This document shows positions 33,813-64,000 of a stretch of DNA of 64,000 nt, piece after piece. The stretch's first letter is position 1; every line of letters begins with the position of its first letter. Origin of the DNA: Bugula neritina (lineage: Eukaryota > Animalia > Bryozoa). A program made the translations under genes and the position numbers. A model generated the notes under the pieces. The model ran no database searches. It was not told where the DNA came from and worked only from the letters and a program-made list of their open reading frames with translations. The stretch covers positions 1-64,000 of the forward strand of contig CAXIUT010000236.1 of assembly GCA_964035545.1 (NCBI GenBank). Reading direction: 5' to 3'.

Positions 33813-33833
33813 TTACAATATGTTTGCCAACAG

Positions 33834-34481: not shown

Positions 34482-34501
34482 TTACTGCAAGAGCTACTCG
34501 A

Positions 34502-34900: not shown

Positions 34901-35449
34901 GGATAAGAAAAGACTACTACATTTATGATTGTGTATTTAAAGCAAGTAGTTGTGATTACTAGAAGCTCTTTCATTAGAATTCACGTATCAGTACTGTTAT
35001 TGCTTCATCAGTCTTTAATACTACTTTTAATAAATTCCTGTGTTACAGCTTTAGTTTGTTATAGCAATGATATAATTATGTCAGTCATACAACTTCTTCC
35101 CTTTTTGAAAAGGGAGAAATTAATAGTCAACATTTAGGAAAGGGAGGGAAATAGTTTCTTTAAGTCACCTATTCAATTTCTTTATGTCTCTTTGCGATGT
35201 TAGTTTGTGTTTCTCTTTTTGATAGTTAATTTAGCATAGTCTATCTTCTTTTCCAGTTTATTTTGCCCTAAACATGATTTAAAAAGCTGCTTAAATTAAG
35301 GGGACAAATTTTTAAAAATATTTGATTGCTACATCTATGTTTTCCCTTCATTAGATTCTGAAACTTGAAGCACTAAAATTAGTGTACATTTTCTTTGCTG
35401 CATACAGATCACTGATTTGGTAATGCCATTGGAACCTTCAGGGTGATGA

Positions 35450-35598
35450 TGAGTCATGAAATATAACACATGACGCAGCAATAGTCACGTGATCAGTTAC
35501 AGACGACTGAGCACGTGATCAGTTAAACAGACGACTGAGCACGCCTGCTGCGCTGTCATTAGTAAGTTGCTCAACTGAAACTGTCATTGCACGAAGGT
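35450..35598 (+). promoter_or_regulatory. CpG-containing promoter-like segment and first splice donor of the repeated non-coding unit
   Basis: TGAGTCA (35450-35456), TGACGCAGCA (35471-35480), GTCACGTGAT E-box (35484-35493) within a duplicated ~26-bp motif, TGAGCACGC (35536-35544), AAG|GTAATC donor at 35597. E-box and AP-1 motif are retained in the inverted copy (59661-59666, 59693-59699). Confidence 0.45.
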
Positions 35599-38500
35599 AA
35601 TCCTTTATAATTTAGCATTTTATTTAATATGTTTTACTAACCTTTTACTGACTGTTAATTTGTATTTATTCATAGGCTTGGAATTCACATTGAATATTGT
35701 ATTTAATTGATAGGTTACTACCCATTTCTAGTCAATTTGATTCTGCAGTCATTTGAGCAGATGCAACTGCAAGGCTTATAATAAATTTCAATTTAGCTTA
35801 GCTTCAAGTTGGCTTAATTTCAACATAACATAATTTACCCTGTTCTTCTCTGGTCTGTTGAACTAAACTACAAAATCAATACTATATGAATAATAGTATA
35901 ATTGAAATCAAATGTTTTAATTTTTTTCACTGTAGCCTTACCAGTACAATCAAGTTGAACTTATGCCCAATGGTTTAATTTGTTTGACTTTATTTTAGTT
36001 ACATACTCATTATGGTCATAAACATTCCTTGAAATTGACAAGTTGAATATTCAGTTTAAGCTGCTGTAACTATAAAAAACAAGTTATATTTCTTATTTGA
36101 AGAAATCTCTTTCTTGGTTCTGTAGACTATGTTGAAGTTATCATGGTACAATTTTCAATACTCTAGATTTTAGAGCCTATGAGATGTCCCATACATGTCT
36201 GTCATCATTTATTCAACAATTTTAATTCATCAAATGTGTTTTGTTTTTTAGAATGTCTCCAAGCAGCTCAGATATTCACACATTAGAGGACATATGGTCT
36301 ACACCAGGAAGATAGGACCTAGCCAACTGTGGTCAGTTCTGTGAGCCCCATCTTGGTTATAATTAGGTATTTATTATTTATGATAACTTACTGTGTTTTC
36401 AATTTTACAGGATTATAAGGAAAGAATTATCTTGTACTTCTTGTATTTTTCTTGATAACTGATGTCCATAATTCATGTATATCTATTTCAGTTTGAAGTA
36501 GTGAAAAAGTTATGTTTTTTTTCATTATTTTAGTCTTGTTAACTCCAAGTTTTGTGGAATTGTTCAAGTTAATCACTTGTAGTCTTTAGACTAGTATCTC
36601 AGCTCTGCAAACATTTACTATTAGCTAATTAAAATGAAATGTTTTATATATTAAGGTAGTTTAGAATATTCCTTGTCTGTTTTGTAGTTGTGTTTAACCA
36701 CATGCAGATAGAAGCTATACCTTGATATCAAGACCAGTTTTATATCCATGAGATGCTCACAAGCCACATGTAGCAGTTGTCTTCTCTCTGTGTTTGATTC
36801 ATCAAAACTTTTCATCAGTTCAGGTTTGTGTCTAAATGAATTGTTTATTGTAACAATATTTACTCTTTCCCTGTGTTATGTGCTATTAGATTTTAGCATT
36901 CATAAAGCTACTACCAGTGCATGGCAATGAGGTGAACTCAGTTGACCCATATCCGCTCCTTAGTACTTTTATTCTAGCTCCTAGGGGATAGCTACTCTCG
37001 TAAATGACGTTAGATTCAGCTTTTTCTACCTTCCCTTGGACAAAGTTTGATTTAAGATGAGCATAACAAGCGTTACTACTCAAATAGTGAAGCATGTGCT
37101 TTTGATCAAAGTTGCAATATAATTGTATAAAGTGTGGAATATATAACTTTGTAAAGTTGTGCACATGGAACTGTATAGAGATGATGATTAAAATGCAACT
37201 GTGTGAGTGTGGTACATGAAATATTCATACTATATGTTCTGTTAGCTATGAACTCCACTGTTGATTGATTTTGCAGTGTAACACTTGGCTGTTTTTCTGC
37301 TTTTAGTTTTAAAAAATTATGGCTGTTTATTTCATTCAAGAATTTCCAAACATGTTTCTAATAAAAGTTAAAACAGCCCATTGTAAAGGCTCTTGCAAAC
37401 CTTACCCAGCTTTAGCTATGTATGTAACCTTCCTGGCTCAAACCCAGTGTTGGTTTGTTTCACTTACAGGCTACTGATGGCTGCTTCATAATATTCTTTC
37501 TGGATGGTTTGGTATTAGTTGGAGTTGTTTGATCTCTACTTGACCTGAACTATTTTCAGACTGAGGTGAACTACATACTACTCTATTTGAAGTGTGAGGT
37601 TAGCCGGTTATTATACTTTTTGCATGTCTAATTTTTCAGTAGTGTGTTGGAATTTTTGCATCTGTATCAGCTGTGATGAAAAGTAGACTTAATTTCTGTC
37701 AACATAAAACATATTATAGCCAGGAGAATATAAGCTCAGTAGAAGTGAAAATATATGCATCTTATCCTTGTTTGTCTGAATGTCAATACAAAATTTGACC
37801 CAAGAGATGAGAAATCAGCACATGATTAGAATTTTATTTTAAGGTTTTACTTTTTATGGTAATGAAATCATTGCCTTCATTGAACACCATCAATAAGTAA
37901 TTTATTTGACTTTGGAGCTGTTTAAGCTGTTTCATGTAAATACTAGCAGCAAACCTCATTCCAACTAAATGAGCACTCTTCAATCATATTTATTATTTTG
38001 TCAATTTATTGCTAGCTTTGTGAAAACCTCTTATTAAATAATATAAGTTTACATAGTGCTATGCTTGCTTGTGGTAAGAAAATGAAGTCTGGTTTTCATT
38101 TTAGATATTTTATTATGGTTCTGTCAGCAAATCATGTTTTTTATTTAAATAATTATGACATTCTTCTATACATCTATACATAAATAAGAATATGAATTTT
38201 CTTTTGTACTTCTCCATTTTGCTTCTGTTGCTTTCTTTACCACTGTTATATAAATTAAGCATTTTATTTCATTGTTTTTCATGATATGCGACTGCTTAAT
38301 TATAGGCTGCTTTCTTCTTGCAGTAACTGGTGTGATGGTCACATGGTCAGCTACTGGACAACCAACCAATTGGGTATAAAGTTGGACAAAGTCATTCTAG
38401 ATTATTCTTCACATGTGTCAGCTGGATGAGCTATATGGAGGTAATTCCTGTTGTTTTTAATATATAGAGATATTTATTGTAGCAGTCTAAAAGAAAGTAG

Positions 38501-39498
38501 CAAAGTGAAAACAGTTACATCATAAGTTGTAAATGAAGTTGCAAGAAGCAAGCGTAAAGATAGGTGAAAATACTGGGTTGTTATACCAGTCAAAAAGGCC
38601 AGCTATATTGTAGTAGCCATAATTAATGTGGAAAAATCGTAATATAGCTTGCATAGCTGTAATAATACATGAAAAGCTATAATGCATTTAATCACAATTC
38701 AACCAGTAAACAGTTTCAAACTTTTCATCGAGTTGTATTTACAAGAAGTACTAATAAAAGTTGCACTGAAGTTAAACTGATATATTTTTTTACTTCTCTG
38801 TGAGTGGATATGACTTGGATGTTTTATGTGCCTTAACTTTACCTGATTATACATACCTGTGGTGGTTGATGTCTACTTTTATATCATAATTATATATTTA
38901 GTTTGTTTTACCCTATCAGCTAAATATTCCAATTTTAAATTACTAGGGAATAGGTTTTAGCAGTGGCAGCTTAATTCTGCTCAAGTCTCACATAACTTAA
39001 CTATATACCTCTGGTATTATGCATTATACAATGTACTTATTTTCTGTAGTCATAAAACTGGTTTTTGATGCTTCAACTAAATTTTGTTGCTTTAAAGTCA
39101 CTTTTATTGTGGATGTCTGCTTTGATTTCTCTATATAATTGTTGGTGTGCCATGCATGGGTTTTAAAGCTGTAAACACTGTTTTACGTTTCACAAAATAT
39201 ATATTGTTGTATCCTATATTATCATGATGTTAGTTATAAAAAAATTTCACTTGTCAAAAAGTGGTAATTTGTATAATTGATAGTCATGAAAGGGGGGGGG
39301 GGGAATTCATGTGTTATATAATTCTACTGCACTATAAGGGAGAAAATATGTTGTCCGTATCAACTATCCTGTTGAAATTTGGGCATACATGCTTTTACAG
39401 ATACACGCGTAACTGTATAAGGCATGAAAGTTGTTGGGACACTACATGAGCAGGGAAAGCTTTTGTTGAATCATTACAGCTTCAGTTGTATTAACATA

Positions 39499-39573
39499 GC
39501 TATGTTAGCTACATTAGGCTATGTTAGCTACATTAGGCTATGTTAGCTACATTAGGCTATGTTAGCTACATTA
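39499..39573 (+). repeat. 19-bp tandem repeat (GCTATGTTAGCTACATTAG) x4
   Basis: Read directly; about two copies at the homologous inverted position ~49795-49840. Confidence 0.85.
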
Positions 39574-40062
39574 TGTTTTTCTCTGTTGCGTTATTTGCTT
39601 ATGTACAGCTATTTTGGCTATTCCAGAAAAAAAGCTCTTTTCTAGACTGATATAAACCCTGTTCTTTCAGCTCTCTCTTCATTCAGTCTTTGGAAATGCA
39701 CATCTCTTTTAAAGTAACAGGAACTAACTTGAGAGTTGGTTGTTTTAGAAATGCTCACCTTTCATCTGAAGGATTTAAAGCGCCAAAGGCTTAAGCTACA
39801 TGTACACACGCTGATTTTTTCAGCCGATTTTGTACTTCTCGATTTCGCTATTGCTGATTGAAAAATCGACTGATTTTCTAGGCAATTTTTATTTCCCGGG
39901 TTAATTTTCTGCTTGCGTTTTATTGGCGGATGGCTCTCAGTCTATACAACTTTCTTTTAGGTTCATGCGCAAAATTCAAGATTAGTTTCACGTGCATTAG
40001 CATAGTAAACTGAGTAAACATACATCGGCATTATTATAATATACATTCTTTTCACACGTGAA

Positions 40063-42786
<2,724 letters not shown>

Positions 42787-42930
42787 TTGACTCTTTTGCT
42801 AGTTAGCAATGCATGTACTTTTGATTAAAATATTACATATTTTGCATTATATTTTACAAGAAATATTGATATTTTTGTTTCAGTTTTGTTTAAAACTATG
42901 CATATATTTATTTACACAACATACAAAAAT

Positions 42931-44415
42931 TTACATATATTGATAAGTCATGTGTGCATTTAGTTGCGATAAAATTGAAGAAGTACTCTCATGTGGTGAT
43001 TCGGCTACGGCACCGTCTTCAGCAGAAGCACTAGCTGGCAGCAAACTGGGCACGTATGGCCTCCTAGTTGTTTCCGACTGCTGGCAGATAGCATCCACAA
43101 CTTCCCCAGACAGGCGATGCATCAAGCGTCTCCTTACCTACAAAAAGTATATGAATTGATAAGCAGTGGTTTGATAATATTTTAATCGCAACTAACGAAG
43201 TCTTGAGTCTTTTTAGTTACAATGCTTACAGCAACATTGGTGATCTGGCGTAGGTCAGCAACAAGCGCATCACCCCACAAGTCCAAGTGGTCCTTGGTTG
43301 GAGTGTTCAGAAACTCCAAACACTTCATCCTTAGATGATCTTTGGGATTGGATTCTAGTGGTCGCTAAAACAGAACATAAAAAGCATTTAAGAAAGTGTT
43401 AAGTATTACAAACCTGCCCAACTTATATCAAATCTTTTTTATTTGACATTTTAGTAAGATTGTAAATGAAGCAAACCACTATATCTGTTATCGAATTACA
43501 GTTAACCCTAATTAAGCATTCTTGTGTTTAAAGTATGTTATTAAACCATCCTGCCATGTGGATTTTTTAGGCACAACAATTTTTAATAGCTGGTATACAG
43601 CTCTCACACGTTCACCTTTATTGTGTGAAAGCCTAACTACTAACTTTTGTTCCTCTGTTACGTGGTGTGTTGCCACGCATAGGTGGGGGAGATGTCACAG
43701 GTGGGGGAGATGTCACAGGTGGGGGAGATGTTACAGGTCGGGGAAATGTCACAGGTGGGGGCGATGTCACAGGTGTCCTAGATGCAGCTGGCAGCAGAAG
43801 TATTGATTCGGACCTTGATGATGTGGAAGATGGTTGTGAAGAATCACCTTGACTACTTCCATCATCCATCATCTGATTTCTATCCTAAACTCATATTATT
43901 ATGTGAAATAATTAACAACCTATTAATAAATAATGTATGTTTACATCGATTTGCATACTACCACAATCACTACTGTTGCTTACCTCAGCAATAAGGTTGG
44001 AGTGCGAGCTCCTAGTTTTTAGAGTTGGCAAAAGAAAGAGCATCTGCTCGTAATATGGGTATGTTTTTTTGTTGCGCTCCTCTCCACCAGCTCCAGACGG
44101 CTGATGAAAGCGCCTTTTGTGCTCCTGTTAAAAATCATAGTACCTGTATGAATATTAATTTAAATATCATTTAAATTTTCTCATTCCAAATGCAGTGAGT
44201 ATAAAATTATATTAAATTACCTTTGCAAAGTAAGTTCTATTGGTTTTGTGAAGAGTCTGAAGCTCTTCAGCCGATATTCCAACAAGAGCTGCCAGGTCAG
44301 CCCAAGCCCTCTTCTTGGCATCCTTGTTTGAATAAACCTTACTACGGTTATCCCACAGAGCAGGAAACTTCTCCAAGTTGTCGACATATTTTTGAGTAAT
44401 CTCTGAATCGTACAT
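42931..44415 (-). CDS. Harbinger accessory DNA-binding protein: N-terminal MADF (Myb/SANT-like) domain, Pro/Ser linker, C-terminal BESS-like helix; 5 exons: 44415-44221, 44124-43984, 43884-43645, 43364-43230, 43137-42931; 305 aa
   Basis: Hand-spliced CDS is 918 nt with four phase-0 GT-AG introns. FPALWD..SKVYSNKDAKKRAWADLA...PSGAG...YPYYEQMLFL is MADF-typical; DHLDLWGDALVADLRQITNVAVRRRLMHRLSGEVVDAI is BESS-like; convergent with the transposase. Confidence 0.88.
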
Positions 44416-44467
44416 GATGAGGTATATATATTACAGCAGGCAGCACCGAACTGACTGCTGCCACCAA

Positions 44468-44650
44468 TCACGATCATATTTATGTTGAAAAACGGCCGTC
44501 TTGGAGCTAAATTAGCAAAAACTCACAATCATATTTATGTTGAGAAAACGGCCGTCTTGGAGCTAACTTATTAACAAAAACTCACAATTATATTTATGTT
44601 GAGAAAACGGCCGTCTTGGAGCTAACTAAATTACTAACGAAAATTCACGA
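44468..44650. repeat. Three ~55-60-bp direct repeats (ATATTTATGTTGAGAAAACGGCCGTCTTGGAGCTAA core) just upstream of the MADF gene start
   Basis: Core occurs at ~44477, ~44531 and ~44590, each with an ACGGCCGT palindrome. Confidence 0.85.
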
Positions 44651-45017
44651 TCAGTGCAAATCTGTTCTTTCAACAAAAATTAAACTATAAAGTTGAGATG
44701 CTAATATTAGTTACTTAAATATAAAAATTAAAACTAAAAGTTATAAATTGTATTATAAATGAGTAAAAGTTGAGAATAATACCAGTGTTCTATTTAAAAA
44801 AGCAATATGTTTATTCTGATGTTCTAATAAATAAAAATTGCGTTGTTATTACTACTAGTACTACTTCGATTGATAGTTATTTTTATATTTGTATTTCATA
44901 TATGATGCATCGTAGTGATAGCAACGTACTAATTACTTCCTAGTTGTATTTCAACAATGGTGTTAACTTCGCTCGCTGTCATGATTTTCTGCCAGCTTTT
45001 GATTGGCTGGTTCAACA

Positions 45018-45155
45018 GAAAATCGCCCGATAAATTGAACATGTTCAATTCTGAAAATCGCTACAAAAATCTGCCAAAAGCAAAATCAGCCGATTTTTCA
45101 AAAATCCTAAAAAATCGCTAACAGTTTATCGGCCGATTTTCATGAAAAATCGACC
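45018..45155. promoter_or_regulatory. Subterminal AAAATC(G)/(C)GATTTT motif cluster (also at 39811-39877), candidate MADF-protein binding sites
   Basis: About 10 copies in both orientations at the right end (e.g. AAAATCAGCCGATTTT) and about 5 at the left end; 18-bp perfect palindrome AATTGAACATGTTCAATT at 45033-45050. Confidence 0.6.
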
Positions 45156-46647
45156 TGTGTACATGTAGCTTTACAGTTCATGCAGGCTAATATATAAGGT
45201 AAGTTTCATTTTTCATTTATTGGTGCACACAATTTATTTGATGAAGAATAGTTAATAAATTCAGTTTGATACAAAGTTGTTTGTGGATTAGGTGTTATTT
45301 ATGTTCAACAATTGCTATGGCCATAATAAAAATAGGAAATGTTAGTTTTGAAGTATTGAGTTTACATAACTACCATCTCTAAATTGTGTTTTAGGATAGA
45401 ATTACCCGTGGGGTGGATACCAGGGCTACATAGGATACTGTGTCAGTTGGAGACAGAGGGAACACACCAGTGAAAACTACAGCTGTCGTCTCTACCCCTT
45501 CACCTGTGCTAGAAGTGGTGAGACAGTACTGCTCCTATAAATACTACTAGGCATGGTGAGACAATGATATACACCTACTTATAATTTTCTTTCTTGAACA
45601 AGAACAGGCCATTCCACCACTGGTAGTTATTGCTAATTCAATTGCAAAGCTAGAACGTTTTTGGCTATATAGCAGGCTACAATAGTTAGCTATTAAGCCA
45701 TTAGAGAATAGCCTTTATTTTAAGTTATTTATAGCAAGCAGATGACAAATACAATTAGTAATCAGTATTCTATTATAAGGCATAGACCCATAAGGAGTGA
45801 CCCACAAGGTAGCTATTTTGTATTGCATTATATTCAAATTTTGTTCTTTTGATAGTTTATAGTGTTGTAGCTTCACTGAATGATATTTCTTGTATTTATG
45901 TTTTTTATTGCAGTCAGTTGGTCATGAGTGTATTATATAGTTGACATTGTTTAATAGGTTTCACTGTTAGTAAAGGTTGGTCACATAGAAATAAAGATGC
46001 AATTCAGTGGCAAATGAGCTTCAGACTCTACTTAGTCTTGAGAATGAAAATTTAATATACTGTTGCAGGAACGCTTACCAACGGAGCTGGTGGAGACTGT
46101 CATAATTTAATATATTATTCTGTTTGTAGAGGCGCTGGCCAATATCAATCAATTCCTCAAGATTCCCTGCCTGCTGCACATAGGTTGCGATATCAACTCA
46201 GCAGATGTTTTTCATGTCAGCCAATCAGATTTGCTGGAGTGAAGCACAAATATATTGCACCGTTGAGCCCTAGCAGGTGTCTTGTACCATGACTTCTAAG
46301 TCTGACATGTGTTCACAGGTGCCTTATGTCTCAGGAGATATGTTGACATTAGCTCACAAGTCTTCTTTTACATTGTTATGTACCAATGCAAAAGTAAATT
46401 TTTTTATACTAATTTAACTCTTTTTGTATACATTTTATCCATGCGTTAGTGTGCAACAATAAACTGATGACTATACTATTTTCACCAGGTTTTTTGATAT
46501 ACCCATTTCTAGGATCCAATGTATTAGGCTTGCCTAATTTTATTACAAGAACTTTTATGTTTTTTTACATGTATTTTATTTGATTACAAATGCAACAATA
46601 AATACTACGGTGGCAGGTGGCTACCTTTGTGGAATGGCTCTTTTTGT

Positions 46648-48710: not shown

Positions 48711-48806
48711 ATACATATATAAAAAAGGAAAAGAAAAAAACTTCCTTGACATGCAAAGTGAACAGAGAAGTGCATTATGGAAACGGTTGATGAACACTGC
48801 ACTAAC

Positions 48807-49631
48807 CTCTCTCCTGTCGTAAAGTCTAATGTAATCTTTGTGTTGTCAACTCAGAGGTCCATGTGGGAACCTGGGCCCAGGTCATTGAAAAGTCCAACAC
48901 CAGCTTAACCTGGCTCAAACTACAAAAGTTTCAAGACTAGAGCGGAAAGCAAACCGTAGTACAACAAATTTGATCAGAAAGAGAAAAGTGGACAGCAAAC
49001 AGGACGACAAGAAATATAACAAAGAGAAGAGAACAGGAAAACAAAGTTACTAGAATGATTTCTACATGCTACATAACACATTTCGAGCACCTACATGTTC
49101 AGTTTCTATCCATTCTCAAAGATGACCATAGCAATTAGGGAGCAGGAACCCACGGTGCCGCAACGTACGACGTCAGAGGATCCATGAGGGCATATGGTGG
49201 AGAGTTTGGGGCCTGTAGGGTCCACTCCAAGAAGTAGAGACTAAAGACAGCATGCCAGCTTATCAGCAGTAGATTTTTGGTGCCATAATATGTATCATGG
49301 AGCAATTCTTGCTAGCTATCACAGTATCTTCTGTAGCCCTGGTATCCATGCCCAGGATAACTCCATCCTAGAACACAGTCAATAGATATAAGTTGTGTAA
49401 ACTCAATACTTCAGCAACTAACATTTCCTATTTTTATTATGGCCATAACAATTGTTGAACAATAATAACAATAACCCCTAATCCACAAACAACTTTGTCT
49501 TAAACAGAATTTATTAACTATTTTTCAACAAATGAAAAATGAAACTTACCTTATATATTATCCCACATATAGTTGTGCCAGTACTGTAACCTTTTGGTGA
49601 TGTAAAACCTTCAGATGAAAGGTGAGCATTT
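48807..49631 (-). pseudogene. PSMB7: Proteasome subunit beta-2 (PSMB7-like) unprocessed pseudogene, copy B; exons 49631-49550, 49367-49091 (internally deleted), 48919-48807
   Basis: Translates as (R)NAHLSSEGFTSPKGYSTGTTICGIIYK | [36 protein letters not shown]...LLLGVDPTGPKLSTICPHGSSD...GSCSLIAMVIFENG*KLNM* | ...GLFNDLGPGSHMDL*V...DYIRLYD. This is colinear with recalled PSMB7 motifs ([54 protein letters not shown]). Multiple stops and frameshifts; introns retained. Confidence 0.9.
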
Positions 49632-52600
49632 CTAAAACAACCAACTCTCAAGTTAATTCCTGTTGCTTGAAGTGAGATGTGCGTTTCCAAAGACTGAATG
49701 AAGAGAGAGCTGAAAGTGCAGGGTTTTTATTAGTCTAGAAAATAGCTTTTGTCTGGAATAGCCAAAACAAGCAAATAACACAACATAGAAAAGCATAATG
49801 TAGCTAACATAGCCTAATGTAGCTAACATTATAGCTATGTTAATAAAATCAAAGCTTTAATGATTCAACAAAAGCTTTCCATGCTCATGTACTGTCCAAA
49901 CAATTTTCATGCCTTACAGTGTACCTGTAAAAGCACGTATGCCCAAATGTCAACAGCCAATGGGTTATGCAGAATAGTTGATGTGGACAACATATTTTCT
50001 CCCTTATAGTGCAGTAGAATATATATAACACAGGAGTTACCAACCTTTCCCTAACATTCCCCCCTTTCATGAATATTGACTATTAATTTCCCCCTTTTGA
50101 CAAACTGTGAAAATTTTTATAACTGGCATCATGATAATATAGGATACAACAATATACATTACATGAAAAGTGAAGCAGTATTTACAGCTCTAAATCCTGC
50201 ATGGCACACTAACAACTATCAAGACAAACATCCTCAACAAAAGTGACTATAAAAACAACGAAATTTAGTTGAAGCATCAAAAACCAGTTTTAGAGACTAT
50301 AGAGAATAAGAACATTGTATATAATGCATAGTACCAGAGGCATATAGTTTAAATGTGAGACTTTGGCAGAAATAAGCTGCTACTGGTAAAACCCATTCGC
50401 TAGCAATTTAAAATTGGAAAATTCAGCTGATTGGGGTAAAATAATATAATTAGGGTATAAAAGTAGACATCAACCACCAAGGGTATGTATAATCAGGTTA
50501 AGATAAACCGCATAAAACATCCAGGCCATACCAACTTATAGAGAAGCAAAATAATATATCAGTTCAACTTTAGTCAAATTTTTAATTGTAATTCTTGAAA
50601 ATATAACTTGATGAAAAGTTTGAAACTGTTTACTGGTTAAATTGTGATTAATTAAAAGTTTTCGAATAATTCTATTGTAAGTAGTTTAATCAAGGATTCG
50701 TGTTATACTTAATAGGAATTGTTGGGACTTTAAATAAGTTGGGAAAGCTTTTCCCTAATGCATTATAGCTTTTCATGTATTATTACAGCTATGCAAGCTA
50801 TATTACAATTTTCTGACACTCATTACGGCTACTACACAAGAGCTGACCTTTTTGACTGGTATAACAACTACGCTTACAACTTATGATGTAAAGGCTTTTA
50901 CATCGCTACTTTCTTTTAGACTGCTACAATAAATATCTCTATATATTAAAAACAACAGGAATTACCTCCATATAGCTCATCCAGCTGACCCATGTGAAGA
51001 ATAATCTAGAATGACTTTGTCCAACTTTATACCCAATTGGTTGGTTGTCTAGTAGATGACCATGTGACCATCACAGCAGTTACTGCAAGAAGAAAGCAGT
51101 CTATAATTATGTGGTGTTGCATATCATGAAAAACAATGAAATAAAATACTAAATATAACATATTTTATAAAACATTATTGAAGAAAGCAACAAAAGTAAA
51201 AATGGAGAACAACAGGGGAGGGGGGGAATTCACATTTTTTATTGATGTATAGGTGTACAGAAGAGTGTCACACTTGATTAATTTAAAAAAATGATTTGTT
51301 GAAAGAGCCATAACCAAAAATCAAAAATGAAAGCCTGACTTCGTTTTCTTACCACAAGCAAGCATAGCACTATGTAAACTTATATTTTTTAATAAGAGGT
51401 TTTCACACATTCAGCAATAAATTGACAGAACAACAAATATGATTGAAGAGTGCTCATTTAGATGGAATGAGGTTTGGTAGTATTTACAAGCTCCAAAATC
51501 AAATGAATTACTTATTGATGGTTTTCAATGAATACAATGATTGTATTAACATGAAAGTAAAATCCTAAAATAAAATCCCAATCATGTGCTGATTTTTCAT
51601 CTCTTCAGTCAAGTTTTGCATGGAGCTAGGGTAAGGTTGGCAAGAGCTATTACAATAGGCTGTTTTAACTTTCATTAGAAACACATATGGCAATTCTTGA
51701 ATGAAATAAACAGCTAAAACTTTTAAAGCTAAATATAACGACAGAAAAACAGCCAAGTGTTACGGTAGAATTGATCAACAGTGGACTTCATAGCTAACAG
51801 AACATATAGTATCAGTATTTTATGTGCCGAACAGTACAGTTTCATTTTAATCATCACTCTATAGTACAGTTCTATGTGCACAACTTCCCAAAGTTATATA
51901 TTCTACACCTTACACAATTATATTGCAACTTTTATCAAAAGCACATGCTTCAGTGTTTGAGTAGTAACGCTTGTTATGCTTATCCTAAATCATATTTTGT
52001 CCAAGGGAAGGTAGAAAAAGCTGAATCTAACATCATTTATGAGAGTAGCTATCCCCTGGTAGTAGCTTTATGAATGCTAAAACCTAATAGCACATAACAC
52101 AGGGAAAGAGCAAATATTGTTACAATAAACAAACCTGAACCGATGAAAAGTTTCGGTGAATCTAACACAGAGAGAAGACAACTTCTACATGGCATCTCAT
52201 GGATTTAAAACCAGTCTTGATAGCAAGAGAACTTTTATCTGCATGTGGTTAAACACAATTACAAAAAAAAACAATAAATATTCTAAACTACCTTAATATA
52301 TAAAACATTTTATTTTAATTTGCTAATACAGTAAATGTTTGCAGAGCTGAGATACTAGTCTACTGACTACAAGTGATTAACTTGAACAAATTCACAAGAC
52401 TTGGAGTTAACAAGACTAAAATTATAAACAAACCATAACATTGTTGCTACCACTTCAAACAGAAATAGATATACATGAATTATGGACATCAGTTATCAAG
52501 AAGAATACAAGAAGCACAAGATAATTCTTCTAATACATCGTGTAAAACTAGTAAAATTGAAACCACGGAGAAAATTATTGTAAATAATAAATACCTAATT

Positions 52601-53801
52601 ATAACCAAGATGGGGCTCACAGAACTGACCACGGTTGACTAGCTCACATCTTCCTGGTGTAGACCATATGTTCTCTAATGTGTGAATATCTGAGCTGCTT
52701 GGATACATTCTAAAAAACAAAACACATTTGACAAATTGAAGTTGTTGAATAAATGATGACAGACATGTATGAGACAAATTATAGACTGTTGAATCTAGAG
52801 TATGGGAAATTTGTATCATGATAAAATCAACTTAGTCTACAGAACCAGGAAAGACACTTCTTTGAATCAAAAACTTTTCAGTTGAACAACGTAAACTGAA
52901 TATTCCACTTTTTAATTTCAAGGAATGATTATGACTATAATATGAGTATGTAACTGAAATAAAGTCAAACAAATTGAATTATTGGGTAGGAGTTAAAATT
53001 TATTGCACAGTTATGGCTATTTTGAAAAGAAAAGTTGATTTCAATTATGAGCCATACAGTACAGAGTAGCAAATCAATGAATTAAAATCATAAGCTTGTA
53101 CATGTGGTGAGCAAAGCAACAGCCGCACTGTTACAGAAAGGTCATTGTAAAATGTTAGTGTAAATATTTGTGCAAAGTTTAATACTCCTGCAGAGGGGTT
53201 GATATAGAATCACAAAAATTATGTCTAATGATCATATATCACAACAAAATACCGTAAATATTAAAACAGCATTATATTAATACATAAATTAACCATCTCT
53301 TCAGTGTGGATAACAATTAATTAAGGCAAGCGGATAAAATCAAGCTGAAGACAGGTCTACTGTAAAATGAAAAATTTATAGAACAGAAATGGAAAAAAAA
53401 CTGTAAACACTGAAATAAAAATAAAATATGATACAAGCAAAAATGGCTTGGCATATTATATAATTAGTGGTAGGTACAGCAGCACCAATATTATGCTTAG
53501 ACAAGAAATTATCCCAAAGGATAAATTTTCAATAAACTAAAAAAATGAGCACTGACTCACTGCATCAACTATTAGCTAGAAAACCTTACATCAAACTAAA
53601 AGCAGTATAACAGCTAGGGTGCTAAAATGTATAGCTCACTATTTGTAGTATTACTAACATTATTATTCTTAGTATTGATTTTGTGGTTTAGTTCAACAAA
53701 CCAGAGGAGAACAGGGTAGAATTGTTACCTTGAAATCAAGCCAATTCAAAGCCAAGCTAAATTGAGATTTATTATATAAGTCTTGCAGCTGCATTTACTC
53801 A
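49632..53801 (-). repeat. Copy B of the amplified unit (inverted homologue of ~35755-39748), with internal deletions and a ~610-bp private insertion at ~53048-53660
   Basis: Block-by-block reverse-complement matches, e.g. 50966-51082 vs 38324-38440 and 52595-52709 vs 36252-36366. Confidence 0.88.
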
Positions 53802-54202
53802 ATTGAGTGCTTTAAATATTTGTTTTTGTTTTTGAAAATTTTATAAAAGTTCTTAAACTTGTTCATTGAGCTAAAACATATAAAACACTATAAATTAAGC
53901 TCATGAATTACAACCATGTTCAGTGCCAGTGAGATGCACAGAATAAAAAGTGTCCATCATTGAAACTGTAATTAAATCAAGTTTATGTTGATAATCAAAT
54001 AAAATTTGTTCAATTAAACAATTTATTTATAATTTTTATTATAAATCTTTAGTGAAAACATGTAACAAAGGGCAAAAAACTGGGTGAAATCATCCGCAAC
54101 TACCCTCTGTAAACATATAGTAATATGAGGCACGCCTCCTACCGATAAGTAGCATAATGGTGGACAACGCCCTAAAATCGCCGCTCTCATATCGATCATC
54201 TC
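53802..54202. mobile_element. Truncated (right-half) copy of the MITE at 57206-58018
   Basis: Matches 57626-58018 including the TIR CCCTAAAATCGCCGCTCTCATATCGATCATCTC and the same flank AGGGCTGAGGCTGACAA. Confidence 0.7.
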
Positions 54203-57200
54203 AGGGCTGAGGCTGACAAAAGCTTTTACAATGAGCTGTTTTAACTTTTATTAGAAACATGTTTGGCAATTTTTGAATGAAATTAACAGCTACAACTTTT
54301 AAAACAAAATAAAACGACAGAAAAACAGCCATGTGTTACGGTAGTGTTAATCAACAGTGGATTTCATAGCTAATAGGAGCAGATATAGGTCAACTGAGTT
54401 TACCTAACTGTCTAGCACTGGAAGTTTTACTAATTCCAAGGGTTGGTAGTAAAGGTTAGACAACTTTAACTTAATGAAAAGAAGAGTTAGTATTGTTGCA
54501 GTAAGCAATTCATTTAAACACACACCTGAACTGATGAAAAGTTTCGTTGAATCAAACACAGAGAGAAGACAACTTCAAGTGTCGGCTTGTGAGCATCTCA
54601 TGGATATAAAACGGGTCTTGATAGCAAGGTGACTTCTATCTGCATGTGGTTAAACACAACTACAAAACAGACAATAAATATTATAAACTACCTTAATTAT
54701 ATATAAAACATTTTATTTTAATTTGCTAATAGTAAATGTTTGCAGAGCTGGGATACTAGTCACAAGATGTCGAGTTAACAAGACTAAAATAATAAATAAA
54801 ACATTACTTTTTCACTATTAAAGATGAAATAGATAAACATAAATTATGGACATCAGTTATAAAAAAGAATACAGAAAGTACAAGATAATTAATTCCTAAT
54901 ATCCTGTAAAATTGGTAAAATTGAAAACACAGACAAAATTATCATAAATAATAAATACCTAATTATAACCAAGATGGGGCTCTCAGAACTGACCACAGTT
55001 GGCTAGGTCCCATCTTCCTGGTGTAGACTAAATGTGTTCTCTAATGTGTGAATATTTGAGCTGCTTGGAGACATTCTAACAAAAAAACACATTCGATGAA
55101 TTAAAATTGTTGAATAAATGATGACAAGACATGTATGAGACATCTTACAGACTGTAAAATCTAGAGTATTGGAAATTTACATGGTGATAAATTTTTATTA
55201 TGATAAAATCAGCATAGTCTACAGAACCAGGAGAGAAACTTCTTTGAATCAGAAACACAACTTGTTTTAGTTGAAGCAGCTTAAACTGAATATTCCACTT
55301 TAACTTTTGAATTTCGATCCATGATTATGACCATGATGAGTATGTAACTGAAATAAAGTCAAACGAATTAAATCATTGGGCAACAGTTAAACTTTATTAC
55401 ACTGGTAAGGCTGTAGTGAAAAAATAAAAACATTTGATTTCAATTATACTATTATTCACAGTATTGATTTTGTAGTTCAGTTCAACAGACCAGAGAAGAA
55501 CAGGGTAGAAGTTGTGTTGAAATTAAGCTAATTTGAAGCTAAGCTAAATTGAAATTCATTATATGCCTTGCAGTTGTATTTACTCAAATGACTGCAGAAT
55601 CAAATTGACAAAAAATGAGTGGCAGCTTATAAATTGAATAAAATATTCAATTTGAATTCTAAGCCTATGAATGAATACAGATTAACAAACAGTTTACTAA
55701 AGACGGTACAAAATTATTAAATGACGTGCTAAATAAAGGATTACTTTGGTAACATGACCAAACAGTTTCAGTTGCTGGACCAGTCAGTTTGAAGGGCAAC
55801 TTAGTAATGGCAGTGCAGAAATTGACAGAAATTGAACAGGTGAGCTAGAAAAACTGCTTGTTCTAGAAGCTATTCAGGTAAATGATGAAAATAAATGTTG
55901 CAACTTGTGATTTGACTTTTGGAATTTTTATGGAGCTTCATCATCCTTCTAACCATTCACCATTAAATCACTAATTTCTCTTATTGAATGCAACTAGATA
56001 TTAGCATGAGGTTAGGGACCTAAAGAAAAAGGACAGGGCTGTGCATGCACTTGCTTAGTCCTAACTCTGACTACTGGTTGTGGGTAAACATTCAACTACT
56101 TGTTTAAAATGTGTTGGGGAGGTCATGGTCATGAATTACTAGACAATCTGTATAGCATTAAGTTTACTATAATATGTGTGTACTGTCACTGTATGCCTGA
56201 TGAAATAACTTTTATGGACATCAATTTTAAATAGCAGGAATTTGGGATAAGGTAACTTTAGAAAATAAAGATTTAAAATAAAACATACCACGGACAGATA
56301 AAGATGAGGCTTACAGGGATGGGAAGAATAACACACAGAGAAAAAGAGTACAGGTTGCTGTTCCTCTGCCCATTCTGTAACACAAAAAATAGTAAATAAA
56401 CTTGTTCAAAATACAATAGAAAAAAGGAAGCAATAGAAACATCACCTGTAGAATTTTTTCTATCAAATTGACAAATTTATTAGCAAATTCCAAGCATTCA
56501 GAAAACCCTCAACACTATGCTAACTCTGTAGAAGTATATATTATATCTAAAGTTTCTAAGTGGTTAAATGATTGAACCAACATCAAAATTTTCTACTCAT
56601 ATATAATACAGATGTGTGATATAAATAGGAAATCTAGTAATGTAATGAGTCTTGTGAAACAGTATAAATTTACAGCTCTAAAACCTACGTCGCAAACCAA
56701 CAATTCAAAGAATCAAGACAGAAATTCACAATAAAAGTATCTTTAAAACAATAAAATTTAGTTGAAGCATGAAACACCAGTTTTAGAGAATATAGAAAAT
56801 AAGTATATTGTATAATGCATACTACGAGAGACTTTGACAAAATTACGCTGTACATGCCACAGTTAGCCCTAATTTGCGAATAATTCAAAAATGCAACATC
56901 CAGCTGCATGACTGAAACTGAAAACTTGGACATGCGAAAGTAATAACCGGCTAACCTCACACTGCAAATAGAGTAGTATGCAGTTCACCTCAGTCTGAAA
57001 ATAGTTCAGGTCAAGCAAAGATCAAACAACTCCAACTAATACCAAACCATCCAGAAGGAATATTATGAAGCAGCAATCAGTAACCTGTAAGTGAAACAAA
57101 CCAACACTGGGTTTGAGCCAGGAAGGTTTCAGAGATATATATCTAAAGCAAATAAAGTTGCAAAGATATGGAAATGATATCTTTATACGAAGCTAGGGTG

Positions 57201-57205
57201 AGGCA
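54203..57205 (-). repeat. Copy C of the amplified unit (tandem duplicate of copy D with deletions)
   Basis: 54203-55800 matches ~37405-35560; 55870-56640 nearly identical to 59990-60760; 56640-56850 matches ~39190-38990; 56940-57130 matches ~37610-37425. Confidence 0.88.
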
Positions 57206-58018
57206 AAGGTGATCTATATGAGAGTGGCGACTTTAGGGAGTCATGGGGACATCATTATGCAGAATTCTGCGCTGCGAGTTTATAAAAGTTAAAAAGGGAA
57301 AATTTTGTCACTTTTTTTATTTCATTATTATTTCTATTTTATGTGTACATTTTTAATTTTATTTATTGCTATAGTTTTTAAACACATTCTTTATGCATAT
57401 AAAATTAAAAACAAGTTTAAAACTCACTCACTAATAATTATTCACGTGTAGCTTAATATATTGACAATAGAAAGCCCAAAGTTATTCAATTTAGTTTCAA
57501 ATAGCATGAGGAAATTTATTTGAATTAAATTCTTAAAAATTATTATTATTTGAACTATTTTAAAAAGTTTTATCCAATACTAAGTTCACACCTTTGAAGC
57601 CATAAAAACAATCATTAAATAATTCATTGAGTGCTTTAAAATATTTTTTTTGTTTTTGGAATTTTTTTAAAAGTTCTTAAACTTCTTTTTTGAGTTGAAA
57701 CATATAAAACACTATAAATTAAGCTCATGAATTACAACCGTGTTCAGTGCCAGTAAGCTGCACAGAATAAAACGTGTCCATCATTGAAAATGCAATTAAA
57801 TCAAGTTTCTGTTGATGATCGAATAAAAATTGTTGAATTCATTTATAATTTTTATCATAAATCTTTAGGGAAAACATGCAAAAAAGGACAAAAACTCAGT
57901 GAAATTATCACGCAACAATCCACTGTAATTATATAATAATATGAGGCACATCTCCTACCAATAAATAGCATAATGGTAGACAACGCCCTAAAATTGCCAC
58001 TCTCATATCGATCATCTC
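57206..58018. mobile_element. Non-autonomous TIR element (MITE, possibly Mutator-like), ~813 bp
   Basis: Imperfect ~33-bp TIRs AAGGTGATCTATATGAGAGTGGCGACTTTAGGG (57206-57238) / CCCTAAAATTGCCACTCTCATATCGATCATCTC (57986-58018); degenerate ~10-bp TSD AGGGTGAGGC / AGGGCTGAGGC; absent from the homologous site in copies A (~37400) and B (~51630). Confidence 0.72.
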
Positions 58019-61000
58019 AGGGCTGAGGCTGACAAGAGCTTTTACAATAGGCCGTTTTAACTTTTATTAGAAACATGTTTGGCAATTTTTGAATGAAATT
58101 AACAGCTACAACTTTTAAAACAAAATAAAACGACAGAAGTGTTAATCAACAGTGGATTTCATAGCTAATAGGAGCAGATATAGGTCAACTGAGTTTACCT
58201 AACTGTCTAGCACTGGAAGTTTTACTAATTCCAAGGGTTGGTAGTAAAGGTTAGACAACTTTAACTTAATGAAAGGAAGAGTTAGTAATGTTGCAGTAAG
58301 CAATTCATTTAAACACACACCTGAACTGATGAAAAGTTTCGTTGAATCAAACACAGAGAGAAGACAACTTCTACACGTCGGCTTGTGAGCATCTCATGGA
58401 TATAAAACTGGTCTTGATGGCAAGGTGACTTCTATCTGCATGTGGTTAAACACAACTACAAAACAGACAATAAATTTTCTAAAATACCTTGATATATAAA
58501 ACATTTCATTTTAATTTGCTATCGAGCTGAGATTCTAGTCTAAAGACTACAAGTCATTAACTTGAACAAATTCACAGGACTTGGAGTTAACAAGACTAAA
58601 ATTATGAATAAAAGATAACATTTTTACTACTTCAAACAGAAATAGATAAACATGAATTATGGACATTAGAATACAAGAAGTACAAGATAATGATTTGCCT
58701 AACATCATTTAAAATTGGTAAAATTAAAAACAGAGAAAATTATTGTAAATAATAAATACCTAATTATAACCAAGATGGGGCTCTCAGAACTGACCACAGT
58801 TGGCTAGGTCCTATCTTCCTGGTGAAAACCATATGTTCTCTAATGTGTGAATATCTGAGCTGCTTGGAGTGATTCTAAAAAACAAAACACATTTGATAAA
58901 TTAAAATTGTTGAATAAATGATGACAGATATATATGAGACATCTCATAGGTCCTAAAATCTAGAGTATTGAAAATTGTATCATGATAGAATCAACATAGT
59001 CTACAGAACCAGGAAAGAAACTTCTTTGAACAAGAAATATAACTTGTTTTTTATAGTTACAGCAGTTTAAACTGAATTTATTCCACTTAAACTTTTCAAT
59101 TTCGAACCATGATTATGACCATGATGAGTATGTGACTGAAATAAAGTAAAACAAAATAAATCATTCAGCATAAGTTGAACGTTATTATAGCGAGAAAAAA
59201 ATTAAAATATTAGATTTCAATTATACTATTATTCTTAGTATTGATTTTGTAGTTCAGTTCAACAGACCAGAGTAGAAAAGGGTAAAAGTTAAGTCAAAGT
59301 CAAGCCAATTTGAAGCAAAGCTAAATTGAAATTTATTATATGCCTTGCAGTTGTATTTACTCAAATGACTGCAGAATCAAATTGACTAGAAATGGGTAGC
59401 AGCCTATCAATTAAGTACAATATTCAATGTGAATTCCAAGCCTATGAATAAATACAGATCAACAATCAGTAAACTAAAGATAATGTTGGTAAAAAATTAA
59501 TAAATGACATGCTAAACAAAGGTTACCTTGGTAAGATGACCAAACAATTTCAATTGCACGATCATTCACTATGAAGAGCAACTTACTATATAATAATGAC
59601 AGTGCAGCAGACGTGCTTAGTCATCCGTAACCAATCATTGCTCAGTCGTCTGTAACTGATCACGTGATTATTGGGGCATGCGCTATATCTCATGACTCAC
59701 TTCCAATGGTGTCACCAATTCAGTGCAATCTGTATGCAGCAAAAAGAGCAATACTAATTTTGGTGCCTAAGATTCTATGAGGCTTCAAGTTTCAGAATAT
59801 AATGAAAGGAAAACAGAGATGTAGCAATCAAATACTTTTAAAAATTTGTCCTCTTTATGCAGCATTATCAATCATGCTTAGGGCAAAATAAACAGGAATA
59901 TATATCACTATGCTAAATTAACCATCAAGAAAAGAAACACAAATTCACGACACAAAGAGGCATAAAGTAATTAAACAGGTGAGATAAGAAAACTGCTTGT
60001 TCTAGAAGCCATTCAGTGTTGCAACTTGGTGTTTTGATTTTTGAAATTTTTATGGAGCTTAATCATTCTTTAAACCATTCACCATTAAATCACTAATTTC
60101 TGTTATTGAATGCAACTAGAGAGTAGCATGAGGTTAGGGACCTACAGCAAAAGGCCAGGGTTTGGCTTGCCTTTGCTTAGTCCCAACTCTGACTACTGTT
60201 TGCAGGTAAACATTGAAATACTTGTTCACATGTGTTGGGGCAGGTCATGGTCATGAATTACTAGACAATCTGTATAGCATTAAGTTTACTATAATATGTG
60301 TGTAACGTCACTGTATGCCTCAAGAAATAACTTTTATGGACATCAATTTTAAATAGCAAGAATTTGGGATAAGGTAACTTTAGAAAATAAAGATTTAAAA
60401 TAAAACATACCACGGACAGATAAAGATGAGGCTTACAGGGATGGGAAGAATAACACACAGAGAAAAAGAGTACAGGTTGCTGTTCCTCTGCCCATTCTGT
60501 AACACAAAAAATAGTAAATAAACTTGTTCAAAATACAATAGAAAAAAGGAAGCAATAGAAACATCACCTGTAGAATTTTTTCTATCAAATTGACAAATTT
60601 ATTAGCAAATTCCAAGCATTCAGAAAACCCTCAACACTATGCTAACACTGTATAGGAGTATATATTATATATAAAGTTTCCAACTGGTTAAATAATTGAA
60701 CCAACATTAAAATTCTCTACTCGCATTATACAGATGTGTGACATAAGTAGGAAATCTAGTAACCTGATGAGTTTAATATAAAACAGTATAAATTTACAGC
60801 TCTAAAACCTGCATGGTAAACCAACAAGTCAAAACATCAAGGCAGACATTCACAATAAAAGTGACTGTAAAACATTATAATTTAATTGAAGCATGAAACA
60901 TGTTTTTTTTAGATAATACAGTATAGAAAAAAAGTATGTTGTATAATGCATAGTAGGAGAGACTTTGACAAAATTAGCCCAAGCTAACACCCAAATGCTA

Positions 61001-61690
61001 GTCAGTCAAAATTGGAATATTCAGCAGATTGGGGTAAAATAATATAATTATGACATAGAAGTAAACATCAACCACCACATGTATGTATAATCAGGTTCAG
61101 TTAGGGTACATAAAACACCCAAGTCATATCGACTTACAGAGAAGTAAATTATTATATCGGTTTAGCTTCAGTGCAACTTTTATTTGTAATTCTTGAAAAT
61201 ACAACTTGATGAAAAGTTTGAAACTGTTTACTTGTTGAATTATGATTAAATGAAAATTTGTGAACAATTCTATAGATAAATAGCTTCATCAAGGAGACAT
61301 GTTATACTTAATAAGTAATACCTCCATATAGCTCTTACAGCTGACACATGCCAAGAATAATCTAGAATGAATTTGTCCAACTTTATACCCAATTGGTTGG
61401 TTGTCTAGTAGCTGACCATGTGACCATCACACCAGTTACTGTAATAATAAAGTAGTCTATAATTATGTGGTGTTGCATATGATGAAAAACAATGAAATAA
61501 ACATAAAATTCTAAATACAGCTCATTTATTACAACAGCAGTAGGAAAAACAAAAAAAATGGGAAATGGAAAAATACAAAACAATCATATTTAATCTTGAA
61601 GATTAATCATTACTCAAATAAGTAGAAGAGTGTCATCATGCTTAATTAAGTTAAAATATGATTTGTTGAAAGAGCCATAACCTGATAAAT
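58019..61690 (-). repeat. Copies D/E of the amplified unit (58019-59990 matches 37405-35150 including the promoter-like segment; 60780-61690 matches ~39180-38110)
   Basis: Reverse-complement matches to copy A; near-identical short ORFs at 56139/60261 and 56311/60433 give a 4122-bp offset. Confidence 0.88.
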
Positions 61691-61859
61691 AATAAAGCTA
61701 GCAAATATACCTGATTGTTACCAGCAAGCTAAACATAATGACCAAGTGAGAACAAAATACTTCCCTAGTCTGGAGGCTGCTGAGTCACAATAAACTGATC
61801 AAACTATTCTTACTGACAGAGCAGACAATTTGAAAGTGTGAGCCTTTGAAAATCCTAAA

Positions 61860-63900: not shown

Positions 63901-64000
63901 AGGACAACAGACTCAAGAGAGTGCGAACTATAGATTAAGTGTATATATTGAGATAATTCGTTGATCAGCAACGGAAAAGAATCAGTGAAGCATAAGGTTT

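What the first reader, a model, noticed from the sequence alone, without database searches (positions are those of the whole stretch)
35150..61690. Amplified ORF-less multi-exon unit joined to PSMB7 pseudo-exons and arranged as a convergent inverted repeat: candidate dsRNA/endo-siRNA locus against a proteasome subunit
Seen: one + copy (35150-39793/45171-45442) faces three to four rearranged - copies (49319-61690). The two innermost copies both run into PSMB7-like exons and converge on a ~3.9-kb spacer. Promoter-like motifs and AG/GT-bounded blocks persist in several copies although no ORF does. Established: pseudogene inverted repeats generate endo-siRNAs (mouse oocytes, Drosophila hpRNAs) that silence parent genes or selfish paralogues. 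Inference: a chimeric lncRNA family that could make hairpin or convergent dsRNA with PSMB7 homology. It could also be neutral duplication debris.
Basis: partly seen in the sequence, partly recalled or inferred. Interest (0 to 1): 0.75.

Follow-up and report, generated by a model that had tools for sequence, protein, structure and literature searches.

The report
Subtelomeric duplicon with PSMB7 pseudogene palindrome
The inverted repeat with proteasome-gene fragments is real, but it is one copy of a repeat block found next to the telomeres of most chromosomes of this small animal genome, and nothing in the sequence suggests it evolved to silence the proteasome gene.

Summary
A + unit (35072-39793, continuing at 45171-45442) faces rearranged - copies (49320-61505) at 78-94% identity. 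Both inner ends carry intron-containing fragments of the beta2 proteasome gene PSMB7.

The locus is not unique. The whole block from about 33 kb to the contig end is collinear at 88-98% with blocks that abut (TTGGGGT)n telomere arrays at chromosome ends. The convergent layout recurs at eight other places. Five further ends carry only the distal arm.

The split in the + copy is a recent 5,377-bp PIF/Harbinger insertion, and the site is empty at the other ends examined.

- Proximal arms form one clade and distal arms lie on the other side of the tree.
- Arm-to-arm identity is the same within a locus (89.6%) as between loci (89.5%).
- Pseudo-exons are no better kept than pseudo-introns.
- Only 12 perfect 21-mers match PSMB7 exons.
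- The unit has no conserved ORF, Pfam domain or Rfam RNA.

A read-through RNA would fold into a long hairpin, so small-RNA production is physically possible, but I had no RNA data. Best reading: a passively spread subtelomeric duplicon with a passenger pseudogene.

The scan flagged the same structure on other DNA of this genome (s1-458060, s1-447305, s1-442962). The contig is not human.

The parts
32759..34899 (.). Proximal tandem-repeat zone (49-bp x17, 35-bp x6, 13-bp x31) between the 26-bp satellite and the + arm. It is shared with other chromosome ends.
   Evidence: TRF. Collinear with C5 right end and the C3 internal site at 94-97%.
35072..39646 (+). Proximal (inverted) arm: a non-coding unit of about 4.6 kb, with its head at the left and tail at the right.
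   Evidence: It is 93-98% identical to the equivalent arm at C5R, C3int, C7R, C8R, C6R and C9R. No Pfam match and no conserved ORF.
35470..35520 (+). Promoter-like head core of the + arm (CCAAT-like, CRE-like and E-box elements). Coordinates are approximate.
   Evidence: Aligned with the heads of - copy C and of the 2.18-kb unit. The motif search is.
39647..39793 (+). PSMB7 fragment of the + arm, first part: the tail of intron 1 and the first 45 nt of pseudo-exon 2, which starts at 39749.
   Evidence: 85% identity to the parent gene. Exon mapping is.
39794..45170 (+). A 5,377-bp PIF/Harbinger transposon inserted in pseudo-exon 2. It has a TTA target-site duplication and 15-bp terminal inverted repeats.
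   Evidence: Junctions and empty sites at C5R and C7R. Weak DDE_Tnp_4 match. At least 4 other full-length copies at 97-99% in chromosome interiors.
45171..45442 (+). PSMB7 fragment of the + arm, second part: the rest of pseudo-exon 2 (to 45198), intron 2, and the first 48 nt of pseudo-exon 3 (45395-45442). The arm ends here.
   Evidence: An in-frame stop in pseudo-exon 3 is seen.
45443..48747 (.). Spacer: about 1.2 kb of sequence shared with other ends, then 55-bp (46728-48409) and 6-bp (48312-48709) tandem arrays that vary in size between ends.
   Evidence: C2R has the spacer piece 45469-45998 but no + arm.
48748..49733 (-). PSMB7 fragment of the distal arm: intron-1 tail, pseudo-exon 2 (49631-49550), intron 2 and pseudo-exon 3 (49367-49256). 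A deletion follows, then the 3' part of exon 4 (about 49225-49078) and degenerate exon-5-like sequence.
   Evidence: The copy was made at the DNA level, because it contains introns.
49734..53810 (-). Distal-arm unit copy A, collinear with + arm positions of about 600-4650. It has no head.
54217..57128 (-). Partial and rearranged unit pieces: copy B at 54217-55803, and tail and middle fragments at 56652-57128.
57626..59991 (-). Unit copy C, with the promoter-like head (motif at 59661-59679).
60017..61505 (-). Further tail fragments of the unit.
61506..64000 (.). Distal continuation of the same duplicon into the 2.18-kb units that are interleaved with telomere tracts. The contig ends in a telomere array at 76.9-77.6 kb.
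   Evidence: Collinear with C7L, C9R, C3int and C5R. TTGGGGT arrays.

Best explanation
Window 33-64 kb is one copy of a subtelomeric duplicon of about 30-45 kb. This non-coding repeat block lies directly inside the (TTGGGGT)n telomere arrays of most chromosomes of this 216-Mb animal genome. Earlier notes call the animal a bryozoan; I did not verify that.

Inferred history:
1. An intron-containing piece of the beta2 proteasome gene PSMB7 (intron 1 tail to about exon 5, with an internal deletion) was copied at the DNA level and joined to a non-coding unit. The source was probably a degenerate tandem pseudogene that still lies 3 kb downstream of the gene on C8.
2. The unit was duplicated and rearranged in tandem.
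3. Part of the block was copied once in inverted orientation onto its centromere side, which gave the convergent palindrome.
4. Ectopic recombination or break-induced replication between chromosome ends spread and shuffled the block.
5. A Harbinger transposon recently landed in the + arm of this copy only.

The PSMB7 pieces are passengers. No function directed at PSMB7 is indicated. Any activity of the block, such as transcription from the promoter-like heads or small RNAs from the hairpin, would be a general property of chromosome ends and remains untested.
For: Location and spread:
- The unit and the PSMB7 junction occur only near contig ends of C2, C3, C5, C6, C7, C8 and C9, and at one C3 internal site followed by an interstitial telomere array.
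- The block is collinear at 88-98% from the satellite boundary to the telomere at C7L and C5R.
- C245 itself ends in telomere repeats.

Single origin:
- All copies share the same breakpoint in PSMB7 intron 1.
- Proximal arms form one clade (support 92/92), with the parent gene as outgroup.

Order of events, from identity:
- Parent gene against copies: about 85%.
- Arm against arm: 89.6%.
- Same arm between ends: 94-95%, up to 99%.

Mosaic exchange: the window's proximal arm pairs with C5R, but its distal arm pairs with C9R, C6R and C3int.

No constraint:
- Pseudo-exons are no better kept than pseudo-introns.
- Open frames are broken in other copies.
- There is no Pfam or Rfam signal.

Harbinger insertion: TSD and TIRs are present, the site is empty at other ends, and other copies are 99% identical.
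Against: - No RNA or small-RNA data could be consulted, so a function cannot be excluded.
- The promoter-like head core is kept in diverged copies.
- The exon 2 and exon 3 splice dinucleotides are kept in 17 of 18 copies.
- A read-through RNA would form a stable hairpin with helices of up to 47 bp.
- The palindrome persists at nine places.

All of these are also expected from recent block-wise copying of sequences only 5-15% diverged.
Confidence: 0.8

Rival explanations
1. One reading: a hairpin or convergent-transcript dsRNA locus. Transcripts starting at the unit heads read through both PSMB7 fragments, Dicer cuts the duplex, and the siRNAs lower PSMB7 mRNA in trans.
For: - The inverted arms contain 41 perfect stretches of 21 bp or more, 1.33 kb in total.
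- The predicted hairpin is far more stable than shuffles.
- Promoter-like heads point towards the centre.
- Piwi-domain genes are present.
Against: - Only 12 perfect 21-mers match PSMB7 exons. Four lie in the part that can pair, and none is in the + copy.
- Exon identity to the parent gene is 78-91%.
- Pseudo-exons evolve as fast as or faster than pseudo-introns among copies.
- The arms do not co-evolve within a locus.
- In this copy a 5.4-kb transposon and 2 kb of tandem repeats separate the arms.
- The innermost - copy has no head; the nearest head is 10 kb away.
- PSMB7 is a single essential housekeeping gene. This last point is my own knowledge.
Confidence: 0.04
2. The block is a chromosome-end small-RNA or heterochromatin source. 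It would work like the Drosophila TAS piRNA clusters or the fission-yeast subtelomeric siRNA nucleation sites. The palindrome and dual-strand transcription would feed small RNAs that keep chromosome ends silent and could trap transposons such as the Harbinger copy. PSMB7 homology would be incidental.
For: - The block is subtelomeric, repeated, and present at most ends.
- It has hairpin potential.
- A young copy of an active-looking transposon has inserted in it.
- Piwi-domain genes are present.
Against: - There is no RNA evidence.
- Five ends lack the proximal arm, so the palindrome is not universal.
- Only one transposon insertion is seen in about 27 kb, which is not the transposon graveyard typical of piRNA clusters.
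Confidence: 0.1
3. The units are genes for spliced long non-coding RNAs. They would be driven by the conserved head core and transcribed from the telomere side inward, with a function at chromosome ends. The PSMB7 splice sites would be co-opted as terminal exons.
For: - The head core is kept in three diverged unit types.
- An earlier follow-up, s1-442962, reached the same view of the core.
- PSMB7 exon 2 and exon 3 splice dinucleotides are retained in 17 of 18 copies.
Against: - Identity along the unit is patchy (62-97% per 100 nt) without a clear exon-like pattern.
- Most copies are truncated and rearranged, and lack the head.
- There is no Rfam match and no transcript data.
- Retention of six splice nucleotides is expected at 85-95% identity in only two independent lineages.
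Confidence: 0.06

Closest known systems
Subtelomeric duplicons (segmental duplication blocks) of human, yeast and other eukaryote chromosome ends
   Same: The block lies directly inside the telomere arrays. It is shared between non-homologous chromosome ends at 90-99% identity and is a patchwork of older internal duplications. It carries a DNA-level gene fragment and interstitial telomere-like tracts, and it shows exchange between ends.
   Different: Different organism and sequences. A large conserved inverted arm creates a palindrome centred on two pseudogene fragments at nine places. The telomere unit is TTGGGGT.
Drosophila hpRNA loci and mouse-oocyte pseudogene-derived endo-siRNA loci
   Same: An inverted duplication containing fragments of a protein-coding gene, able on paper to fold into long dsRNA.
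   Different: Neither expression nor small RNAs have been shown. Complementarity to the parent mRNA is low (78-91%, with 12 perfect 21-mers). There is no co-evolution between the arms or with the target. The structure is multi-copy and subtelomeric, not a dedicated locus.
Drosophila telomere-associated sequences (TAS) acting as piRNA clusters
   Same: A repeated non-coding array next to the telomere with a transposon insertion inside it.
   Different: There is no piRNA evidence. The repeats are multi-kb rearranged units rather than regular TAS satellites, and there is only one transposon insertion.
PIF/Harbinger DNA transposons (for the 39794-45170 insert)
   Same: A 3-bp TTA target duplication, terminal inverted repeats, a DDE_Tnp_4-like transposase remnant, and near-identical dispersed copies together with short derivatives that keep only the ends.
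   Different: The transposase match is below Pfam's cut-off, because the gene is split by introns or by decay. Whether the copy is intact was not assessed.

Membership tests
Subtelomeric duplicon | Lies adjacent to terminal telomere-repeat arrays | tested here: met
   TTGGGGT arrays follow the block on C245, at C5R from 17,710,756, and at C7L over 1-11,074.
Subtelomeric duplicon | Shared by several non-homologous chromosome ends at high identity | tested here: met
   Collinear at 88-98% with C5R, C6R, C7R, C7L, C8R, C9R, C2R, C3R and the C3 internal site.
Subtelomeric duplicon | Restricted to chromosome ends, not dispersed like a transposon | tested here: met
   All 152 listed matches of the unit lie within about 45 kb of contig ends or at the C3 site that carries an interstitial telomere. 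Only 31 of 229 candidates were scored, so this is a lower-bound view. Short junction pieces also lie on C8 near the parent gene.
Subtelomeric duplicon | Mosaic structure from exchange between ends | tested here: met
   The proximal and distal arms of one locus have different nearest relatives. Within-locus arm identity equals between-locus identity.
hpRNA / pseudogene endo-siRNA locus | Inverted repeat able to form long dsRNA | tested here: met
hpRNA / pseudogene endo-siRNA locus | Transcription through both arms, or convergent transcription | not testable with these tools
hpRNA / pseudogene endo-siRNA locus | 21-22 nt small RNAs from the arms | not testable with these tools
   No small-RNA data.
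hpRNA / pseudogene endo-siRNA locus | Extensive near-perfect complementarity to the target mRNA | tested here: not met
   Tested exon by exon. The - copy has 12 perfect 21-mers out of 568 and the + copy has none. Exon identity is 78-91%.
hpRNA / pseudogene endo-siRNA locus | Arms kept alike, or co-evolving with the target | tested here: not met
   Arms are 89.6% identical within loci against 89.5% between loci. Pseudo-exons are 85.3% identical against 90.1% for pseudo-introns.
hpRNA / pseudogene endo-siRNA locus | RNAi machinery in the genome | tested here: inconclusive
   Piwi-domain exons lie on C2 and C4. The short Dicer_dimer model found nothing, but its controls were also silent.
TAS-like piRNA cluster | Production of piRNAs from both strands | not testable with these tools
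   No small-RNA data.
PIF/Harbinger transposon (insert 39794-45170) | 3-bp TWA target duplication and terminal inverted repeats | tested here: met
   TTA on both sides, 15-bp inverted ends, and an empty site at C5R and C7R.
PIF/Harbinger transposon (insert 39794-45170) | DDE_Tnp_4 transposase | tested here: inconclusive
   PF13359 at E 8e-4 and 19.4 bits, below the 24.8-bit cut-off, matched on one ORF fragment.

The most novel reading that the evidence does not exclude
The palindromic duplicon at nine or more chromosome ends is transcribed inward from its conserved head promoters and folds into hairpins. These feed a small-RNA pathway that silences chromosome ends and traps transposons, in the manner of Drosophila TAS. 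PSMB7-derived small RNAs would be a by-product that might tune proteasome dosage.
Probability: 0.08. Interest if true: 0.6.

Novelty: new member of a known kind. Interest (0 to 1): 0.22.

Why it matters
The result turns an apparently unique candidate RNAi locus against a proteasome gene into one instance of a genome-wide subtelomeric repeat family. The several similar flags in this genome can therefore be read together instead of as separate discoveries. It also gives a dated sequence of events for how chromosome ends are built in a poorly studied animal group: gene-fragment capture, inverted duplication, spread between ends, then transposon insertion. If small RNAs were found, the nine palindromes would be a ready system for studying chromosome-end silencing.

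Tried and rejected
- Coding unit: Pfam scans of the 18 longest open frames gave only noise (E of 0.007 or weaker), and the 112-aa frame is broken in other copies.
- Known RNA family: the only Rfam hits were sub-threshold miRNA matches caused by a palindromic trinucleotide microsatellite inside the transposon.
- Unit as the parent gene's neighbourhood: 10 kb around PSMB7 shares only about 0.5 kb with the unit tail, through a tandem pseudogene.
- Dispersed transposon: rejected because the unit occurs only at chromosome ends.
- Arm-to-arm gene conversion: rejected.
- Species and telomere-motif literature: two paper searches gave nothing specific.
- Failed calls: one search failed on a wrong frame and was corrected.
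- Steps left out: the joined spliced PSMB7 model was never built, and exons were compared one by one. The large protein searches were not used, because no protein was left unexplained.
Full report
**What the window is.**

The window is G000:C245:1-64000, from a 77,580-bp unplaced contig of a 216-Mb assembly with nine Mb-scale scaffolds. It is not human. The genome is small, and the chromosome ends carry (TTGGGGT)n arrays. The PSMB7 gene also differs from the vertebrate gene. Earlier notes of this scan call the organism a bryozoan with ciliate contaminant contigs; I did not verify the taxon. Positions 8-32760 are a 26-bp satellite of 13% G+C that flips strand at about 15,027. The finding lies in the 30-33% G+C part that follows.

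**Check of the observation.**

- Repeats. Self-BLAST and the repeat finder confirm a + copy at 35155-39799 and 45233-45442. It is collinear in inverted orientation with 49320-53032. Further rearranged - pieces run to 61505, at 78-94% identity. With sensitive settings the + arm starts at about 35072.
- Parent gene. An intact beta2 proteasome gene lies on C8 (L002, minus strand) with canonical AG/GT exon boundaries. Its exon 4 matches 'proteasome subunit beta type-7' structures at E 4e-41 and Pfam PF00227 at 3e-19.
- PSMB7 fragments. The window's - copy aligns to the parent gene from 104 nt inside intron 1 through exon 2, intron 2 and exon 3. It then skips to the end of exon 4 and continues into degenerate exon-5 sequence. 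The + copy stops 48 nt into exon 3. The copies contain introns, so they are DNA-level duplicates and not retrocopies.
- Method note. Exons were compared one by one.

**The split in the + copy.**

Positions 39794-45170 are a 5,377-bp PIF/Harbinger transposon. It has a TTA target duplication and 15-bp inverted ends, a weak DDE_Tnp_4 match, and at least four other full-length copies at 97-99% elsewhere in the genome. The site is empty at the C5 and C7 right ends, and the flanks are contiguous at the other ends examined. The insertion is therefore recent and private to this chromosome end.

**The locus is a subtelomeric duplicon.**

- Distribution. Searching the assembly with the unit and with the PSMB7 junction finds them only within about 45 kb of the ends of C2, C3, C5, C6, C7, C8 and C9, according to the contig lengths. 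The one exception is a C3 internal site (17.85-17.88 Mb) that is itself followed by an interstitial telomere array.
- Collinearity. The whole block from the tandem-repeat zone at about 33 kb to beyond 64 kb is collinear at 88-98% with C7's left end and with C5's right end. At C7's left end the telomere occupies 1-11,074 and the block follows in mirror orientation. At C5's right end the telomere starts at 17,710,756.
- This contig. C245 also ends in telomere repeats.
- Census. Besides the window, the convergent pair of PSMB7 fragments recurs at C5R, C6R, C7R, C8R, C9R, C3int and C7L, and in partial form at C6L. The first seven of these are the other loci compared with the window in the tree and identity tests below. 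Five ends (C2L, C2R, C3L, C3R, C5L) show only the distal arm.

**History inferred from the copies.**

- Tree. In a tree of 18 PSMB7 fragments plus the parent gene, all proximal arms form one clade (support 92/92). The distal arms lie on the other side, and the parent gene is the outgroup.
- Identities over ungapped columns:

| Comparison | Identity |
|---|---|
| Parent gene against copies | 84-85% |
| Arm against arm | 89.6% within loci, 89.5% between loci |
| Same arm between chromosome ends | 94-95% on average, up to 99% |

- Order of events. The fragment was captured once. The inverted arm arose once, later. The block then spread among chromosome ends.
- Exchange between ends. The window's proximal arm is closest to C5R, but its distal arm is closest to C9R, C6R and C3int. 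This shows exchange between ends.
- Possible source. A degenerate tandem PSMB7 pseudogene lies 3 kb downstream of the parent gene (L002 2586-3644). It shares the same junction and about 0.5 kb of the unit tail, so it may be the source. The rest of the unit is not in the parent gene's neighbourhood.

**Tests of function.**

- Coding and RNA families. There is no conserved ORF, no Pfam domain and no Rfam family.
- Constraint. Among copies, pseudo-exons are no better conserved than pseudo-introns (85.3% against 90.1% between arms). Their higher identity to the parent gene (90.7% against 85.7% for distal copies) is what purifying selection on the parent gene alone would give.
- Match to PSMB7. Perfect 21-mers shared with PSMB7 exons number 12 in the - copy (four in exon 2, eight in exon 4) and none in the + copy. 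Only the four in exon 2 lie in the part that can pair with the other arm.
- Points in favour of a function:
  - The arms share 41 perfect stretches of 21 bp or more.
  - A read-through RNA of the short-spacer C7R copy folds with 454 of 493 arm bases paired across, and with helices of up to 47 bp.
  - A promoter-like core persists in the + arm head, in - copy C and in the 2.18-kb distal unit.
  - Splice dinucleotides are kept in 17 of 18 copies.
  - Piwi-domain genes exist in the genome.
- Weighing them. All of these are expected from young block-wise copies, and none shows activity.

**Verdict.**

The best explanation is a passively propagated subtelomeric duplicon carrying a passenger PSMB7 pseudogene palindrome (confidence 0.8). 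The PSMB7-directed endo-siRNA model is unlikely (0.04). A general small-RNA or lncRNA role at chromosome ends remains possible but untested (0.06-0.10 each). The scan flagged the same structure on other pieces of this genome (s1-458060, s1-447305), and s1-442962 described the shared head core. This is a new member of a known kind, of modest interest.

Noticed in passing
window 8-32760; L025 (C1:1-10000): A 26-bp satellite of 13% G+C fills the first 32.7 kb in two opposed blocks that meet head to head at about 15,027. Scaffold C1 begins in the same satellite, so C245 may be its missing end. At the C5 right end the same satellite is only 0.67 kb long.
   Followed up: partly
window 39794-45170: A young PIF/Harbinger family. 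At least 4 other full-length copies at 97-99% lie on C9, C4, C1 and C2, together with many short derivatives that keep only the ends (MITE-like).
   Followed up: partly
L008, L022-L024 (C3:17.84-17.88 Mb): A complete subtelomeric block followed by more than 3.7 kb of TTGGGGT repeats in the middle of scaffold C3. This is either a scaffold join of two chromosomes or a chromosome fusion.
   Followed up: no
L002 2586-3644 (C8:11,205,586-11,206,644); C8:11,620,066-11,620,551: A degenerate tandem PSMB7 pseudogene lies 3 kb downstream of the intact gene and shares the duplicon's junction. A 72%-identical interior copy lies 410 kb away. Either could be the source of the subtelomeric fragment.
   Followed up: partly
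L001, L013, L015, L026, L027: The terminal repeat of the Mb-scale scaffolds is the 7-mer TTGGGGT, not TTAGGG, which is unusual for an animal. Two literature searches found no description of it.
   Followed up: partly
window 46728-48709: The 55-bp and 6-bp tandem arrays in the palindrome spacer differ greatly in size between chromosome ends. At C7R the two PSMB7 fragments are only about 0.8 kb apart.
   Followed up: partly
window 40230-40486: A palindromic (ACT)n/(AGT)n microsatellite inside the transposon gives spurious sub-threshold Rfam miRNA matches (MIR834, mir-1260b).
   Followed up: yes
G000 small contigs C85, C66, C114, C110, C175: Intron-poor proteasome genes with in-frame TAA and TAG codons lie on small contigs. 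This fits the ciliate contaminant contigs mentioned in earlier notes.
   Followed up: no
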